From assembly GCF_001194135.2 (NCBI RefSeq), contig NC_068984.1:145019842-145083841 (forward strand): a stretch of DNA of 64,000 nt, given 5' to 3'. The position numbers were made by a program, and so were the translations under genes. The stretch is from Octopus bimaculoides. Lineage: Eukaryota. Positions 7,842 through 15,996 of this stretch are shown one piece after another. The notes below the pieces were generated by a model. The model ran no database searches, had not been told where the DNA came from, and worked only from the letters and a program-made list of their open reading frames with translations. Numbering within the stretch: position 1 is the stretch's first letter; every line of letters starts with the position of its first letter.

Positions 7842-8471
7842 TCACCCCAAAGAGGGCCAGAAAGCTGCAAAGTACACAACTCCGTCTTCTATGTAGGATG
7901 AAACATAATCAACATGGAGATTTTTTGCAGAAGCCTTCCTTACTTCATAAAGGAAACCATAACGAGATACGGAATGTCTTTGCCAATAATTCTTTTCCTG
8001 CTTGGAATTCCAGATGGCACTAACAAAGGAATTATCTCCCTTGTTGAAGAATTTAACATAAATCAATGTCAGTTTGTTATTGATCTGTTTCTTCAGCTCA
8101 AAGACGAAGTTATCAAGTGTGATGCCTAACCAAGACACCGTTTTTATATCAGGCTCTTCTGCTTTGGCATAAACAGAAGAGACAACGAGGCAATCCTCAA
8201 TGGACACCAAAGACTGAATGATTACATGCCATCCGTTCTTCTTTAGTTCACTGATTCTAGCAAGATGTTCCTCTGGACTTTGGTGACTGTAAACTTTCTG
8301 ACAAACAACATTGACATTTTCAAACACAATCAGGAAATTCAAGTGGCCCTCGTGACAATAAGTCTCCAATAGTTTCACAGAGAAACCAAGGTCACATTGT
8401 TTACTTACAACAATATCCACATTATCAACTGAAACATCAAGACACACAAGCGACTGGTTAGTATTACTACC

Positions 8472-8502
<31 letters not shown>

Positions 8503-9134
8503 TGCCATACCGTATTAAAATAGGTTTTGCTGTTGAGTTGATGGCTGCTTAACCAATGAATATTATAACTCAAAGACAACATCGTATCAACATGTGTCTG
8601 CAGAAGATCATGAGGAATTATAACGGTAACGACTTGTTTACCGTCTTCAGTTGATATATTTAATGAAGAATCACTGAGAGGCTTCACTTCGTGCCATAAT
8701 GGTAAGCTAGGAATCACACTGAGGGCGTATCTCATCAATCCATTGAGGTCCATGTCTTTAGACCAGGCATTAAACAACAAGACCCAAGTAAGTCCAGATT
8801 TATCATGCATCACAGTACACGATGTTCCCTCCATTGCTCCAGTATGACCCCACGAACAGCCATTATCTTCCACCTCTAAACCAAATCCATACCATTCGTC
8901 ACCATTCTCATATTCAGGACGGCTGAGCATCATCTGAACGGTTTCCCCTTCTAGCAATTTGCACTGATTCTCAGACAAACAATCAAATATTTGGAGGACG
9001 TCACTGGCGTTGGCGACCCACCCTCCATACGATTCCGCTCCATCCATTTGTACAAGACTCGAATGTGGAAGGGTCCATCCTTGGAAAGTTTGGGGTTTTC
9101 TCAGTTCCAGCCAAGATTTGTGGAAATAATTCAC
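7842..9134 (-). CDS. Terminal coding exon: end of hydrolase domain (GHTG) plus five ~50-aa repeats
   Basis: 430-aa open frame starting at phase 0 after the acceptor tttccag (AG at 9136-9135). It joins ..NNDE|VNYF.. from the previous exon. Confidence 0.92.
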
Positions 9135-11010
9135 CTGGAAATACAGAAGAACAAGGACACAGTGTCAGATATTTTGGTAAAGAATCAGAAAGTTTAGGGG
9201 TTGAAGGCTGTTAACAAACCAACCCAGGAGGAAGGAGTGGACTGTGGTGGTTAGAGAGGAAGAAGAGAAATATAAGAGGAGGGGGGATGAGAGAAAGAGA
9301 GGAGGAAGTGGAGCAAAAGATGGGATGAAAGAGATGAGGAGATGAAGAGAGTAATAATGGTGGTGGTGGTAATGATAGTAGCAGGAGGAGGAATAGTTTT
9401 AGTCGTTCCTTTCCAGGTCAGTTCTGATCAAAGACGTCCCAGCAATGACCATCTCATCTTTTTCATAATCAAATAAACACATCTGGAATTTCTTCTTTGA
9501 ATATAAGTCTGAGAGCAGAATCAGCAGAGAGAAGTTCCAACAAGATGAAATCTCCAAGCGGTTTAAATATACAAAACTCCAATATCAAAGTTGCTAAAAA
9601 GTGTCAGCAGAAGGGCATCCAGGAATCATGACCTGGATGTGGCCTGGCCCCCTTAGAGTGTAAGAAGTTAAGGGCCAAAATACTTGTCTGAGGTGTGTGT
9701 GGGGGTGGGGTGGGGTTCTTCTCTGAAAAACCATCTGCTGCTTGGTTCTCTTGAGGCTTTCTTACCAATGATATAAGAAAGATGGGTTTGATAGGTGTGT
9801 CAATTTAGATCTTGCATTAGTTGTTCTTGTTCAGATGCAGGTCAACCCTGACATCTGAACTAAAATATTGCCAAGGTGGATGTTGCTTTAATATAAGAAT
9901 GTCTGACAAGGCTGTGAGCTGGTAGAATCCTTAGCACACCGGGTAAAACGATTTAGTGACATTTCAGCTGTCGTTAGATTCCGAGTTCAAATGCTGCCGT
10001 GGTACACTCTGCCTTTCATCTTTGCAGAATCAATAAAAAAAATACCAGTTGAGCACTTGGGCCGATATCCTCGATTTACCTCCTACCCTGAGTTTGTTGG
10101 TCTTGTGCCAAAATTTAAAACCAATATAATGCTGTCTTGGATTGGATTGGATTGCCTGTGTTCAGTCTGCTGCAGGACAAAAGCCTCAGCATGTTCTCTC
10201 CCCCAACCATGGTCTGGTGGGGGAGGCCATGAATTTGAACTTGAGCTCATACTGGTTTGATGAGCCTGCTCATCCACACTGGCTCAACATGGATTGACAG
10301 ACATGTTAGACATCATATGTTGTTAGACATCATATTTCAAAATCGACAAAAGAGTCCATTATATAATCTTTTCTACTCTAGGCACAAAACCCGAAATTTT
10401 GGGTGGGTGTGGTGGTGGTGGTGGTGGTAGGAAGCAGTCGATTAGATCGACCCCAGTGCGTAACTGGTACTTAATTTATCGACCCTGAAAGGTTGAAAGG
10501 CAAAGTCGACCTCAGTGGAATTTGAACTCAGAACCTAACGGCAGACGAAATACTGTTAAGCATTTCGCCAGTTCTCTGGCTTTATATAATGCTATAGAAA
10601 TATTCAGCTTCACACAGTTGGAGCATATTCCTTGTTCATATTTGAAAGACCCCATGGAGGAATTACCATTCCAACTAAAGACAAGACTACATACCTCATC
10701 ATTATTAATAACACCACAAGTGTTATTATGTCCAGTTGCCATGTTGGTTATATTGACATTCTTCAGAATTTCTTTGAGGAATTCGGTATATGGCTTCTGT
10801 TCCACTTTCTCAATAACTTTACCAAGAATCAAATAACCCAAGTTGGAATAACTGTGCCGTTTACCTGTAAAGGAAGACTTGTAAAGTAATAAAATACAAA
10901 CAGTCCATGAGGTTTGTCCCCTCAACTACCATATTCCTTGAACTTATGAAAGGTCATGAGTACAGAAATTAAACAAATTAATATTGAGCATTCTTTGTTG
11001 TTGTTGCTGT

Positions 11011-11056
<46 letters not shown>

Positions 11057-14989: not shown

Positions 14990-15020
<31 letters not shown>

Positions 15021-15849
15021 TGTAAAATGTTCTCGTGATCTGACCTTGTCTGTAAATCTGTTCTCCCTTATAACTTAGGGCCACAGCAGCCCCTGGGATT
15101 CCTTGTTCTTTCATAAAGTTTACAATAATATCGTCAAACTGCTTCATATAGATCGGTGGTTCTTCAGTTGGTGAGACTGGCAGAGAAGCTGAAAAGAGAA
15201 GACGAAAGGGTTGCAGTTTTACGACAATTGTCAGATCAGCATTCAACAGGGAGCTACCACAATGCTAGGGCAAGTTTGAGGGTGAGGTGAGGGTTATCTA
15301 ACACTGAATATTCTTGGGGTAAGGCCAAGTTACCAAGTAAACTCACCTCTTGCATAATGAGAAGATCTGTCTGGAAAATAATCATGGGTTATCTCATAGC
15401 TTTGAGATATCAATGATGTGATTGTTTATCTTCAGAATGGTGTTGTGGGGTAGGTGTGAGAGGCCAGATCTGGCTGGTTTGAACACAAAATGGACAGAAT
15501 ATTTGGGTTGATATGGTTGGTTTGAATGTTAAAGGGTTAATACATTAAACAGATTTTTTTATTCTTCTGAATGCATTATGCCGTGCTTGAGAAGAAAACC
15601 CATCAAGCTGAGCAAAATCGCAGTTGTGGCAGATACCAGCGTCACACAAATGGCACCCGTGCCGGTGGCATCTAAAAACACCCTGGTCTCATGCAAATGG
15701 TTGGTGTTAGGAAGGACATCCAGTAGTAGAAAAACCATGCTGAATCAGACTGGAGCCTGGTCCAGCCTTCCAGTGTGCCAGCCTGATCAAACCGTCCAAC
15801 CCATGCCAGCATGAAGGACGTTAAATGATGATGATGATGATGGTGGTGG

Positions 15850-15922
<73 letters not shown>

Positions 15923-15996
15923 TATTCACTGCTGAAATTGGGATGTACCTTATGTGGTTGTTTTTTCTTACCTTGGTTTAAATTTTCAGATGCCAT
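7842..15996 (-). CDS. Spliced gene: serine beta-lactamase/D-Ala peptidase-fold hydrolase with five C-terminal BTRD1-like repeats (predicted 673 aa)
   Basis: Exons 15996-15972, 15370-15347, 15188-15045, 14575-14426, 12095-11880, 10864-10695 and 9134-7842 join in frame (2022 nt), each intron GT..AG. Motifs: FRIASISK (SxxK), LLQHSAG, PGKRHSYSNLGY (YxN), GGWVANASD, YGFG, GHTG. Confidence 0.88.
9920..10140 (+). mobile_element. Family A SINE, intronic
   Basis: gagctggtagaatccttagcacaccggg..gagttcaaatgctgccgtgg..ctttcatc. Confidence 0.7.
10380..10575 (-). mobile_element. Family A SINE, intronic
   Basis: Reverse complement of the family A body (gtaactggtacttaatttatcgaccc..ggcaaagtcgacctc..gaatttgaactcag). 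Confidence 0.8.
10695..10864 (-). CDS. Coding exon with YSN motif (10842-10850)
   Basis: Acceptor tttacag|GT AAA CGG and donor GAG|gtatgt. 170 nt, phase 1 to 0. Confidence 0.92.
11290..11712 (+). mobile_element. Family C SINE-like repeat (gtgccggtggcacgtaaaaagcacc subrepeats..ttaggaagggcatccagc..catgccagcatggaaa..(GAT)n tail)
   Basis: The same element recurs at ~13720-13860 (-), 15590-15830 (+), 27965-28300 (-), 29940-30370 (-), 41340-41470 (-), 54120-54340 (-) and 54800-55030 (-). Confidence 0.8.
11795..11898. repeat. Five-unit 20/22-bp tandem repeat overlapping an exon 3' end and splice donor
   Basis: Units cctggggtaaattgtaattg alternate 20, 22, 20, 22 and 20 bp. Confidence 0.95.
11880..12095 (-). 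CDS. Coding exon with ITVKHLLQHSAGWDRD
   Basis: Acceptor attgcag|GT ATT and donor CCA G|gtaatt. 216 nt, phase 1 to 1. Confidence 0.9.
12135..12520 (-). mobile_element. Family B tRNA-type SINE, intronic
   Basis: Reverse complement of the 57699-58102 consensus. Further copies at ~12555-12720, 13900-14130, 26370-26568, 26805-27220, 27295-27425, 33880-34110, 43135-43340, 44767-45010 and 47545-47765. Confidence 0.8.
12724..13395 (+). mobile_element. Non-autonomous mariner derivative with ~230-bp inverted arms, both from the element left end
   Basis: TA-flanked termini cacgaggaagtcaaaaa / tttttgacttcccctcg. Transposase N-terminus MGTKEEQRAVIRFLW*EEVSGAEIHWRLLAQYGDSALPCRSVLEWIEKFKSGRTS. Confidence 0.85.
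14155..14370 (-). mobile_element. Family A SINE, intronic
   Basis: Reverse-complement family A body and head. Others at ~16790-16965 (-) and 46708-46880 (+). Confidence 0.8.
14426..14575 (-). CDS. Coding exon with the catalytic SISK motif (14505-14516); missed by the ORF track
   Basis: Acceptor attccag|GT TAT GGA, translation YGMASLDRKVHPDSVFRIASISKTLTAIGILVLWQQKKLELSAKVFGSK, donor AAA G|gtaagt. 150 nt. Confidence 0.93.
15045..15188 (-). CDS. Coding exon (..MKQFDDIIVNFMKEQGIPGAAVALSYKGEQIYRQG)
   Basis: Strong pyrimidine acceptor ctttcgtcttctcttttcag and donor CAA G|gtcaga. IPGAAVA is the typical N-terminal strand of this fold. Confidence 0.85.
15347..15370 (-). CDS. Putative 24-nt coding microexon (DRSSHYAR)
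   Basis: Acceptor tattttccag, consensus donor AG|gtgagt, phase 1 to 1, no stop. Confidence 0.5.
15972..15996 (-). CDS. Putative first coding exon (MASENLNQ)
   Basis: ATG at 15996 followed after 25 nt by the consensus donor AG|gtaaga in phase 1, compatible with the downstream exons. Confidence 0.6.

What the first reader, a model, noticed from the sequence alone, without database searches (positions are those of the whole stretch)
7842..15996. Intron-containing animal gene for a bacterial-type beta-lactamase-fold hydrolase with BTRD1-like repeats
Seen: a clean 7-exon model with all three active-site motifs of penicillin-recognising serine enzymes intact (SISK 14505-14516, YSN 10842-10850, HTG 8838-8846). 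There is no evident signal or mitochondrial peptide. Five C-terminal repeats follow, e.g. WQRHSVSRYGFLYEVRKASAKNLHVDYVSSYIEDGVVYFAAFW. Known: this repeat type (BTRD1/polyglycine-hydrolase structural repeat) is paired with beta-lactamase domains in bacteria and in fungal polyglycine hydrolases. The fold includes D-stereospecific peptidases, esterases and peptide cyclases. It differs from mitochondrial LACTB, which lacks such repeats. The segments VFG.KGIL and LLQHSAGWDRD look like bacterial family members to me. Inference: an anciently acquired or patchily retained enzyme that may act on D-amino-acid peptides, peptidoglycan fragments or Gly-rich substrates in an animal cell.
Basis: partly seen in the sequence, partly recalled or inferred. 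Interest (0 to 1): 0.8.

Follow-up and report, generated by a model that had tools for sequence, protein, structure and literature searches.

The report
Octopus polyglycine-hydrolase-like serine hydrolase gene
This is a real, intron-containing octopus gene for a probably cytosolic beta-lactamase-fold serine hydrolase joined to a five-repeat barrel otherwise solved only in a fungal polyglycine hydrolase; the family is old in animals, kept in only some phyla, and has never been studied.

Summary
On the minus strand, 7842-15996 carries a clean GT-AG gene model of six coding exons, not seven, encoding 665 aa. The motifs SISK, YSN and HTG lie exactly where stated. The N gap is intronic and sits between two identical 234-nt copies.

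- **Catalytic domain:** residues 26-364 match Pfam Beta-lactamase (E 1e-51). The best solved relative is the fungal polyglycine hydrolase 7tpu, ahead of LACTB.
- **C-terminal domain:** it folds with high confidence into five strand-helix-strand-strand repeats. Its only significant PDB match is the 7tpu repeat domain (TM 0.69). A profile of it retrieves hundreds of genuine BTRD1 proteins, many fused to M23 peptidases.
- **Domain order:** it is the reverse of the fungal enzyme and of the nearest Planctomycete two-domain relatives.
- **Localisation:** the N-terminus has no signal-like or mitochondrial-like features.
- **Selection:** dN/dS against Octopus sinensis is 0.12.
- **Age:** four intron positions and phases are shared by octopus, scallop, brachiopod and stony coral (three with the chiton). 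The gene therefore predates the cnidarian-bilaterian split and is patchily retained. It is neither contamination nor recent transfer.

The function is inferred, not shown. Most likely it is a cytosolic MEROPS S12 (DD-peptidase/class C beta-lactamase family) peptidase or amidase acting on peptides containing D-amino acids or glycine, with the barrel serving as an exosite.

The parts
15972..15996 (-). Coding exon 1 (ATG at 15996-15994; 25 nt; ends in phase 1)
   Evidence: The same 25-nt first exon and the N-terminus MASENL.. are found in O. sinensis.
15045..15188 (-). Coding exon 2 (144 nt), start of the beta-lactamase-fold domain. The donor lies at Q|GYG, phase 1.
   Evidence: This intron position is shared with coral, scallop, chiton and Lingula.
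14426..14575 (-). Coding exon 3 (150 nt). It carries SxxK (S77-I-S-K80) at 14505-14516. The donor lies at K|GIL, phase 1.
11880..12095 (-). Coding exon 4 (216 nt). It carries the family-specific HSAGWDRD motif. The donor lies at P|GKRH, phase 1.
10695..10864 (-). Coding exon 5 (170 nt). It carries Y184-S-N186 at 10842-10850. The donor lies at E|V.YF, phase 0.
7842..9134 (-). Coding exon 6 (1293 nt including the TGA at 7842-7844). It encodes the second half of the catalytic domain, with H332-T-G334 at 8838-8846, and the whole C-terminal repeat domain.
   Evidence: The last exon has the same content in coral, scallop, chiton and Lingula.
8499..8636 (-). Repeat 1 of the five-repeat barrel (protein residues 402-447; strand-helix-strand-strand)
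   Evidence: pLDDT above 90
8319..8453 (-). Repeat 2 (residues 463-507). It is preceded by a disordered Ser/Gly loop encoded by an AGT/GGT microsatellite at about 8454-8498.
   Evidence: The loop differs in length between the window and O. sinensis.
8163..8300 (-). Repeat 3 (residues 514-559)
8007..8141 (-). Repeat 4 (residues 567-611)
7851..7991 (-). Repeat 5 (residues 617-663), the most conserved repeat (R621, G628-F-L630, E632, Y649, W661 invariant). It is the only repeat that Pfam BTRD1 matches.
13180..13657 (.). Assembly gap (13414-13423) between two identical 234-nt copies, inside intron 3. Not coding.
11795..11897 (-). 20-nt minisatellite that repeats the exon-4 donor site. A second GT donor at 11792 would add 87 nt in frame.

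Best explanation
The locus is a functional octopus gene. The gene encodes a 665-aa, probably cytosolic, two-domain serine hydrolase.

**Catalytic domain (residues about 22-365).** This is a penicillin-recognising fold of MEROPS family S12, the DD-peptidase/class C beta-lactamase type. By inference from established S12 chemistry, Ser77 of SISK attacks an amide carbonyl to form an acyl-enzyme. Lys80 and Tyr184 of YSN act as general base and acid. His332-Thr-Gly334 on the beta-3 strand lines the oxyanion and substrate wall. Water then releases the acyl group.

**C-terminal domain (residues about 400-663).** This is a closed barrel of five strand-helix-strand-strand repeats. It is homologous to the BTRD1 domain of fungal polyglycine hydrolase and of many bacterial M23 and beta-lactamase-fold peptidases. 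I infer that it serves as a substrate-docking exosite or oligomerisation module.

**Most likely activity.** Hydrolysis of peptide or amide bonds next to D-amino-acid or glycine residues. Candidate substrates are D-amino-acid peptides, peptidoglycan stem-peptide fragments and Gly-rich linkers.

**Evolution.** The family was already present, with introns, before cnidarians and bilaterians diverged, and it has since been lost from many animal lineages. Its deeper origin is unresolved. Both an early transfer from bacteria and vertical descent with losses remain possible.

**Shown:** gene structure, motifs, folds, homology, purifying selection and shared introns.
**Inferred:** expression, localisation, catalytic activity, substrate class and the role of the barrel.
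For: - **Gene model:** in frame with canonical splice sites. It matches the O. sinensis gene exon for exon. dN/dS is 0.116, and the low ratio holds in both domains.
- **Catalytic domain:** Pfam Beta-lactamase at 176 bits. SxxK, YxN and H[TS]G are nearly invariant in 24 orthologues. The AF2 model is confident, with pTM 0.84.
- **Closest solved relatives:** 7tpu (polyglycine hydrolase) ranks first. It is followed by an FmtA-like protein, Pab87, alkaline D-peptidase, a D-stereospecific hydrolase, LACTB and the R61 DD-peptidase.
- **C-domain fold:** AF2 pLDDT 89.5 with five repeats. The only significant PDB fold match is 7tpu, with E 1e-5 and TM 0.69 over 268 columns; the next hit has E 0.45.
- **C-domain homology:** a profile of the animal C-domain finds 1215 protein clusters at E<=1e-3. 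Among the best 141, 43 carry a related beta-lactamase domain. Of the other 98, 90 match Pfam BTRD1 and 31 carry Peptidase_M23. The barrel is therefore mostly a peptidase accessory module.
- **Hint of D-amino-acid chemistry:** many bacterial sister sequences are fused to amidohydrolase domains (PF07969, PF01979) and are named N-acyl-D-amino-acid deacylase by JGI.
- **No signal-like N-terminus:** maximum 10-residue hydropathy is at most 1.3, against 2.0-3.1 in the secreted bacterial and crinoid relatives.
- **Antiquity:** intron positions and phases Q|GYG (phase 1), K|GIL (1), P|GKRH (1) and E|V.YF (0) are shared by octopus, Pecten, Lingula and the coral Pocillopora. The chiton Liolophura shares three of them. 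The mollusc + coral + Lingula clade has 82% NJ bootstrap support.
Against: - No transcript, protein or activity data were available here. Expression is inferred from conservation and from the RefSeq model in a related species.
- Pfam BTRD1 falls just below its cut-off for this protein (22.8 against 23 bits) and matches only one repeat.
- The S12 fold also houses esterases, acyltransferases and peptide cyclases (EstB, SurE and macrolactin acyltransferase all appear). A peptidase activity is therefore not guaranteed.
- The invariant GWDRD loop and residues 241-268 are modelled with low confidence, so the shape of the active-site cleft is not known.
- The fungal enzyme lacks the Gly of the third motif, and its cleft is described as sterically narrow (PMC9912923). 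The animal enzyme keeps HTG, so specificity may differ.
- The NJ tree is a simple distance tree with limited sampling. It does not resolve the origin of the family.
Confidence: 0.6

Rival explanations
1. The enzyme is a true polyglycine hydrolase. Like the fungal chitinase-modifying proteins, it would cleave Gly-Gly bonds in Gly-rich linkers of specific target proteins, with the barrel docking the target.
For: 7tpu is the best solved relative of both domains. The barrel is often fused to M23 peptidases, a family that includes Gly-Gly endopeptidases such as lysostaphin (my own knowledge).
Against: - The domain order is reversed.
- The protein has no signal-like N-terminus.
- HTG is retained, whereas Fvan-cmp lacks the Gly of the third motif.
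- Identity to 7tpu is low, about 10% in the barrel.
- In the NJ tree the fungal enzyme groups with bacterial proteins, not with the animal clade.
Confidence: 0.15
2. It is not a peptidase. It would be a family-VIII-type carboxylesterase, an acyltransferase or a peptide cyclase built on the same fold, acting on lipids or small-molecule esters.
For: EstB-type esterases, IS11, EH7, the macrolactin acyltransferase and SurE are all significant fold or sequence matches. NCBI names the Babylonia homologue 'esterase EstB-like'.
Against: - These hits score below the polyglycine hydrolase and the D-peptidases.
- The third motif H-T/S-G of the DD-peptidase type is conserved.
- The partner domain is found mainly with peptidases.
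Confidence: 0.15
3. It is the octopus orthologue of mitochondrial LACTB, or a close paralogue with LACTB-like function.
For: LACTB is a significant sequence and fold match and belongs to the same S12 family.
Against: - LACTB scores 60.5 bits (single sequence) and 82.9 bits (profile). 7tpu scores 79.6 and 116.6 bits. Bacterial relatives score about 200 bits with the single sequence.
- No LACTB-named protein appeared among the listed homologues.
- The N-terminus is acidic, with no mitochondrial-type presequence.
- The solved LACTB chains are not matched by the C-domain model.
Confidence: 0.03
4. It is bacterial contamination, a recent horizontal transfer, or a decaying pseudogene.
For: The nearest non-animal relatives are bacterial, from Planctomycetota, Acidobacteriota and Bacteroidota, at 31-37% identity.
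Against: - Five spliceosomal introns contain microsatellites and transposon remnants.
- The exon structure is identical in O. sinensis, and dN/dS is 0.116.
- Intron positions are shared with a coral and a brachiopod.
- The reading frame is intact and the catalytic motifs are conserved.
Confidence: 0.01

Closest known systems
Fungal polyglycine hydrolases / chitinase-modifying proteins (Fvan-cmp, PDB 7tpu; Bz-cmp, Es-cmp)
   Same: The two building blocks are the same: an S12 beta-lactamase-fold catalytic domain with SxxK and YxN, and a five-repeat strand-helix-strand-strand barrel. 7tpu is the best solved match for each domain. The motif following 'HSAG' is shared, as HSAGWDRD in animals and HSAGYDRS in 7tpu.
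   Different: - The domain order is reversed: catalytic domain first, barrel last.
- There is no signal-like N-terminus, whereas the fungal enzymes are secreted.
- The third motif keeps its Gly (HTG), which Fvan-cmp lacks.
- It is an animal, intron-containing gene.
- The substrate is unknown.
Planctomycete BTRD1 + beta-lactamase serine hydrolases (e.g. Gimesia fumaroli P0080, 685 aa)
   Same: These are the highest-scoring non-animal hits to the full-length animal profile, at 374-378 bits against at most 318 for other bacteria. They use the same two domain types, and 7tpu is also their best PDB match.
   Different: The barrel is N-terminal and a signal peptide is present. Against a profile of the catalytic domain alone they score no better than single-domain bacterial homologues.
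S12 D-stereospecific peptidases: Streptomyces R61 DD-peptidase, Bacillus alkaline D-peptidase (4y7p), D-amino-acid amidase (2dns), Lip3 DL-peptidase (9sn1)
   Same: The fold and the triad of motifs match. The H-x-G form of the third motif is the R61 form (my own knowledge). All are significant sequence and fold matches.
   Different: None of them has a BTRD1 barrel. They are secreted or bacterial enzymes, and identity is only about 20%.
Pab87 / CubicO self-compartmentalising peptidase (PDB 2qmi)
   Same: It has the same layout, an N-terminal beta-lactamase-fold domain followed by a C-terminal beta-rich domain in a cytosolic protein. It is the top full-length fold hit.
   Different: The C-domain model does not match the 2qmi C-domain; its only significant match is 7tpu. 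Oligomerisation of the animal protein has not been tested.
Mitochondrial LACTB
   Same: It is the one well-studied animal S12 beta-lactamase-fold peptidase, and it is a significant match.
   Different: Similarity is lower than to the polyglycine hydrolase and the bacterial relatives. This protein has no mitochondrial presequence. The solved LACTB chains have no BTRD1-type barrel.

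Membership tests
Pfam PF00144 Beta-lactamase / MEROPS S12 serine hydrolases | HMM score above the curated cut-off | tested here: met
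   176.3 bits against a cut-off of 27, over residues 26-364
Pfam PF00144 Beta-lactamase / MEROPS S12 serine hydrolases | SxxK motif with the nucleophilic serine | tested here: met
   S77-I-S-K80 at 14505-14516. Nearly invariant in 24 orthologues.
Pfam PF00144 Beta-lactamase / MEROPS S12 serine hydrolases | YxN second motif | tested here: met
   Y184-S-N186 at 10842-10850
Pfam PF00144 Beta-lactamase / MEROPS S12 serine hydrolases | K/H-T/S-G third motif | tested here: met
   H332-T-G334 at 8838-8846. H and G are invariant; the middle residue is T or S.
Pfam PF00144 Beta-lactamase / MEROPS S12 serine hydrolases | Serine-dependent hydrolytic activity | not testable with these tools
   Needs recombinant enzyme and an S77A control.
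BTRD1 (PF17660), polyglycine-hydrolase-like structural repeat | Pfam score above the curated cut-off | tested here: not met
   22.8 bits against 23, from one stretch only, residues 619-661. Several orthologues carry precomputed PF17660 hits.
BTRD1 (PF17660), polyglycine-hydrolase-like structural repeat | Five tandem strand-helix-strand-strand repeats of about 45 residues forming one barrel, as in the 7tpu N-domain | tested here: met
   AF2 pLDDT 89.5 with five such repeats. Foldseek finds 7tpu with E 1e-5 and TM 0.69, as the sole significant hit. The repeat definition comes from PMC9912923.
BTRD1 (PF17660), polyglycine-hydrolase-like structural repeat | Profile-level sequence homology to bona fide BTRD1 proteins | tested here: met
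   The animal C-domain profile gives 526 hits at E<=1e-10. 90 of 98 non-beta-lactamase hits match Pfam BTRD1, the best at E 6e-196.
Fungal polyglycine hydrolase (chitinase-modifying protein) | N-terminal repeat domain followed by a C-terminal catalytic domain | tested here: not met
   The order is reversed in the window protein and in all animal orthologues.
Fungal polyglycine hydrolase (chitinase-modifying protein) | Secreted protein | tested here: not met
   No hydrophobic N-terminal stretch. This is a heuristic only.
Fungal polyglycine hydrolase (chitinase-modifying protein) | Cleaves Gly-Gly bonds of a polyglycine linker | not testable with these tools
   Requires a biochemical assay.
LACTB | Closest similarity to LACTB among S12 proteins | tested here: not met
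   LACTB scores 60.5 and 82.9 bits. 7tpu scores 79.6 and 116.6 bits. Bacterial relatives score about 200 bits with the single sequence.
LACTB | Mitochondrial targeting presequence | tested here: not met
   The first 30 residues contain 1 K+R and 5 D+E, with no amphipathic basic stretch. This is a heuristic only.
Pab87/CubicO self-compartmentalising peptidases | C-terminal lipocalin-like barrel that builds an octamer | tested here: not met
   The C-domain model matches only 7tpu, not 2qmi. Oligomeric state cannot be tested here.

The most novel reading that the evidence does not exclude
Marine invertebrates (molluscs, brachiopods, stony corals) may retain an ancient cytosolic peptidase specific for D-amino-acid or glycine bonds, which vertebrates, insects and nematodes appear to lack. 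It would process peptides containing D-amino acids. These could be bacterial peptidoglycan stem-peptide fragments that reach the host cytosol, which would make it an unrecognised arm of animal-microbe signalling. They could also be the animals' own D-amino-acid-containing neuropeptides. The BTRD1 barrel would act as the substrate-recognition module.
Probability: 0.2. Interest if true: 0.8.

Novelty: new variant of a known kind. Interest (0 to 1): 0.5.

Why it matters
The pairing of a beta-lactamase-fold catalytic domain with a BTRD1 barrel has been characterised only in secreted fungal effectors that cut a plant chitinase. The barrel itself has no known function (PMC9912923).

This work shows a conserved, intron-bearing animal family with the reversed domain order, no secretion signal and a complete DD-peptidase-type active site, under purifying selection. 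It dates from before the cnidarian-bilaterian split.

If the enzyme handles D-amino-acid or Gly-rich peptides, it would add a new enzyme class to animal peptide metabolism or to host-microbe interaction in corals, bivalves and cephalopods. It would also give the BTRD1 barrel a tractable eukaryotic context. The family is in addition a clean case of ancient origin followed by lineage-specific loss.

Tried and rejected
- **Single-sequence search with the C-domain.** It returned only two cephalopod-like fragments and missed even the 94% orthologue.
- **Structure prediction of the spliced protein.** I used the O. sinensis orthologue for the full-length model and the window's own last-exon translation for the C-domain.
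- **Full-length Foldseek.** It returned only generic beta-lactamase-fold hits at similar E-values, and 7tpu was not in the top 50. The C-domain had to be searched alone.
- **Literature searches.** I searched for animal BTRD1/beta-lactamase genes, for horizontal transfer in molluscs and corals, and for 'BTRD1'. Nothing relevant was found. Only the fungal structure paper and a red-alga preprint mention the fold.
- **Technical failures.** The Pfam census of all 141 hits exceeded the size limit and was redone on the 98 non-beta-lactamase hits.
- **Unnamed eukaryotic homologues.** The ENA and Logan homologues could not be identified, because neither the cluster look-ups nor the contig look-up gave an organism name.
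- **Rejected readings.** LACTB orthology, contamination, recent transfer and pseudogene were all rejected (see the rival explanations).
- **Other scans.** Rfam and tRNA scans of the window found nothing related to the gene.

Full report
**1. What is in the sequence**

Reading 7500-16500 on the minus strand and joining the open segments gives a gene of six coding exons. They are 15996-15972, 15188-15045, 14575-14426, 12095-11880, 10864-10695 and 9134-7842. Every internal boundary has AG...GT. The CDS is 1998 nt, in frame, and encodes 665 aa ending in TGA.

I find six coding ones.

The scan program flagged a gap at 13414-13423. It lies in intron 3 and is bracketed by a perfect 234-nt duplication, 13180-13413 = 13424-13657. 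This is what an unmerged assembly overlap looks like, and it has no bearing on the reading frame.

The introns carry microsatellites, a mariner-like remnant and other repeats typical of a cephalopod genome.

**2. It is a real, constrained gene**

The best database match is Octopus sinensis LOC115210556, annotated as an uncharacterized protein (94% identity, 660 aa). I mapped that protein onto its own genome. The exon sizes are the same, 25, 144, 150, 216, 170 and 1275 nt, and it has the same short first exon.

Between the two species dS is 0.22 and dN is 0.025, so dN/dS is 0.116. The ratio is low in both the catalytic half and the repeat half. The only length difference is a Ser/Gly loop encoded by a trinucleotide repeat. 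That loop is predicted to be disordered.

**3. The two domains**

*Catalytic domain.* Residues 26-364 match Pfam Beta-lactamase at 176 bits. BTRD1 matches only residues 619-661 at 22.8 bits, just under its cut-off of 23. NCBIfam gives only sub-threshold matches to AmpH, class C beta-lactamases and D-aminopeptidase.

Among solved structures the best sequence match is 7tpu, the Fusarium vanettenii polyglycine hydrolase. It scores 79.6 bits with the single sequence and 116.6 bits with a profile of 24 orthologues. It ranks ahead of an FmtA-like protein, Pab87, alkaline D-peptidase, LACTB (60.5 and 82.9 bits) and the R61 DD-peptidase.

In the alignment of 24 animal orthologues, SxxK, YSN and H-[TS]-G are nearly invariant. 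So is an HSAGWDRD motif, whose counterpart in 7tpu reads HSAGYDRS.

The AF2 model has pLDDT 82 and pTM 0.84. It shows a beta-lactamase fold followed by five strand-helix-strand-strand units.

*C-terminal domain.* I modelled this domain from the window's own last exon (window 7845-8702). The model has pLDDT 89.5 and shows the same five units. Searched alone against the PDB, it matches only 7tpu chain A, with E 1e-5, probability 1.0 and TM 0.69 over 268 columns. The next hit has E 0.45.

The paper describing 7tpu defines its N-domain as five 44-residue strand-helix-strand-strand structural repeats forming a barrel of a novel fold. It reports that the fold occurs in predicted proteins of all kingdoms and has no known function (PMC9912923).

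*Profile search.* A profile of the animal C-domain was scored against 1.84 billion representative proteins. It gives 1215 hits at E<=1e-3 and 526 at E<=1e-10.
- Of the best 141 hits, 43 also carry a beta-lactamase domain related to the animal one.
- Of the other 98, 90 match Pfam BTRD1, the best at E 6e-196.
- Of those 98, 31 carry Peptidase_M23, and a few carry M57, astacin or calpain domains.

The barrel is predominantly a companion of peptidase domains.

**4.

In 7tpu and in the best-scoring bacterial two-domain relatives, the barrel comes first and the catalytic domain last. These relatives are Gimesia fumaroli P0080 and P0049, which score 374-378 bits against the full animal profile, compared with at most 318 for other bacteria. 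A signal peptide is present in the Gimesia protein.

In all animal members the catalytic domain comes first and the barrel last.

Against a profile of the catalytic domain alone, the Gimesia-type proteins score about the same as single-domain Planctomycete and Acidobacteria homologues. Their extra score therefore comes from the repeats.

**5. Localisation**

The first 45 residues of the octopus, other molluscan, coral and Lingula proteins have no hydrophobic stretch. Their maximum 10-residue Kyte-Doolittle mean is 0.4-1.3, against 2.0-3.1 for the Gimesia, Planctomycetia and crinoid proteins. The cephalopod N-termini are clearly acidic, with 1 K+R against 5-6 D+E in the first 30 residues.

This supports a non-secreted, non-mitochondrial protein. 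It rests on a heuristic, not on a trained predictor.

**6. Distribution and age**

Named eukaryotic members in my searches come from:
- cephalopods, bivalves, gastropods and a chiton;
- stony corals (Oculina, Pocillopora, Montipora);
- the brachiopod Lingula;
- more distantly, the crinoid Antedon.

I mapped orthologous proteins exactly onto their genomic loci. Four introns of the octopus gene have the same position and phase in the scallop Pecten, in Lingula and in the coral Pocillopora: Q|GYG (phase 1), K|GIL (phase 1), P|GKRH (phase 1) and E|V.YF (phase 0). The chiton Liolophura has three of them. Octopus, Pecten, Liolophura and Lingula each have a further N-terminal phase-1 intron. In all of them the last exon holds the second half of the catalytic domain and the whole barrel.

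An unnamed eukaryotic contig (L004, GC 34%) carries a divergent paralogue with the same K|GIL, P|G and E|V boundaries. Many unnamed database proteins begin at or just before this last-exon boundary, several of them with 'MEYF...'. They look like last exons called as open reading frames.

A neighbour-joining tree of the catalytic domain (354 columns, 100 bootstraps) gives these results:
- Mollusc, coral and Lingula sequences unite with 82% support.
- Next to them sits an unnamed sequence with the same domain order.
- The next branch out is a large bacterial clade that also contains the fungal enzyme.
- The crinoid protein and two unnamed proteins form a separate deep clade.

The crinoid gene also differs in structure. 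It has a signal-peptide exon plus one large exon, and no recognisable third motif.

A tree of the last-exon region suggests three intron-sharing eukaryotic subfamilies.

My reading is that the gene existed, with its introns, before cnidarians and bilaterians split, and has since been lost repeatedly. Whether the earlier origin was a transfer from bacteria cannot be decided with this tree.

**7. How it most likely works**

*Shown.* The protein has the complete S12 catalytic apparatus and a confident fold.

*Inferred from established S12 chemistry.* Ser77 acylates and Lys80 and Tyr184 shuttle the proton. The H-T-G strand forms the substrate wall, and water then deacylates the enzyme.

*Inferred substrate class.* I propose amide bonds adjacent to D-amino-acid or glycine residues, for four reasons:
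- The closest characterised relatives are a Gly-Gly endopeptidase and D-stereospecific peptidases and amidases.
- The third motif is the H-x-G form seen in the R61 DD-peptidase (my own knowledge).
- Many bacterial sister sequences are fused to amidohydrolase domains and are named N-acyl-D-amino-acid deacylase by JGI.
- The barrel travels with M23 peptidases, a family that includes glycyl-glycine endopeptidases (my own knowledge).

*Role of the barrel.* A role as exosite or assembly module is an inference from its partners and from the speculation in PMC9912923.

My probability estimates are:

| Claim | Probability |
|---|---|
| Active serine hydrolase | about 0.8 |
| Peptidase or amidase of the proposed class | about 0.5 |
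| Strict polyglycine hydrolase | about 0.15 |
| Esterase, acyltransferase or cyclase | about 0.15 |

**8. Comparison with what is known, and novelty**

The protein is a member of Pfam Beta-lactamase / MEROPS S12, and by fold and profile it is a BTRD1-barrel protein. It is not a member of the fungal polyglycine hydrolase family as that family is defined, because the order, secretion and third motif all differ. It is not LACTB, and it is not a Pab87-type enzyme.

The gene is already present in databases as an uncharacterized protein with precomputed domain hits. I found no paper on the animal family.

I rate it a new variant of a known kind. The points of interest are that it is conserved, ancient, reversed in domain order and probably intracellular, and that it is absent from the named model-animal lineages in my searches. 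What limits the interest is the lack of any functional data and the fact that S12 hydrolases in animals are not unprecedented.

Noticed in passing
window 11795-11897 (minus strand, exon 4 / intron 4 junction): A 20-nt minisatellite (about 4.9 copies) repeats the exon-4 donor sequence. A second GT donor at 11792 would add 87 nt (29 codons) in frame, just before the YSN exon. The O. sinensis locus has a similar array with several CCAG|GTAATT copies.
   Followed up: partly
window 12721-13657 (intron 3): 220-nt inverted arms lie at 12721-12940 and 13179-13398 (92% complementary). Between them is an ORF (12959-13156, + strand) with a weak Mos1 transposase HTH_48 match (E 0.003). This looks like a mariner-like element remnant. 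Its right arm lies inside the 234-nt block (13180-13413) that is duplicated across the assembly gap.
   Followed up: partly
window 18174-18272 (+): An Rfam 5S rRNA match (60.9 bits, gathering score 38, model positions 11-110 of 120) runs into the N gap at 18268-18277. It could be a 5S gene, a pseudogene or a 5S-derived repeat.
   Followed up: no
L006 2001-14490 (Antedon mediterranea, P0269): A crinoid protein has the same domain order (beta-lactamase fold, then BTRD1 barrel). It differs in having a clear signal peptide, a single intron after the signal exon and no recognisable H-x-G motif, and it sits in a separate deep clade. It may be a separate acquisition or an old paralogue.
   Followed up: partly
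L004 2-9335 (unnamed ENA contig of 2.3 Mb, GC 34%): A divergent eukaryotic paralogue shares the K|GIL, P|G and E|V intron positions. It reads AGVSK and YSD where the octopus protein has ASISK and YSN, so the nucleophile and the second motif are changed. It may be a pseudoenzyme.
   Followed up: partly
proteins P0148-P0207 (search): Many unnamed database 'proteins' of 380-460 aa begin at or just before the conserved last-exon boundary ((V)EYF...). They appear to be last exons of eukaryotic genes called as ORFs. They fall into about three subfamilies, which suggests a wider eukaryotic family than the named species show.
   Followed up: partly
window 8454-8498 (minus strand, coding): An AGT/GGT trinucleotide repeat encodes a Ser/Gly loop (SSSSSSGGGGS) between barrel repeats 1 and 2. 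The loop is shorter in O. sinensis and is predicted to be disordered. It is a coding microsatellite tolerated within a loop.
   Followed up: yes
L001 3059-7987 and 19443-22546 (Pocillopora meandrina): In the coral, the orthologue is flanked by an arylesterase-family gene and a polyprenyl synthetase gene. No comparison of gene order with the octopus window was possible, because no other gene was recognised in the window.
   Followed up: no
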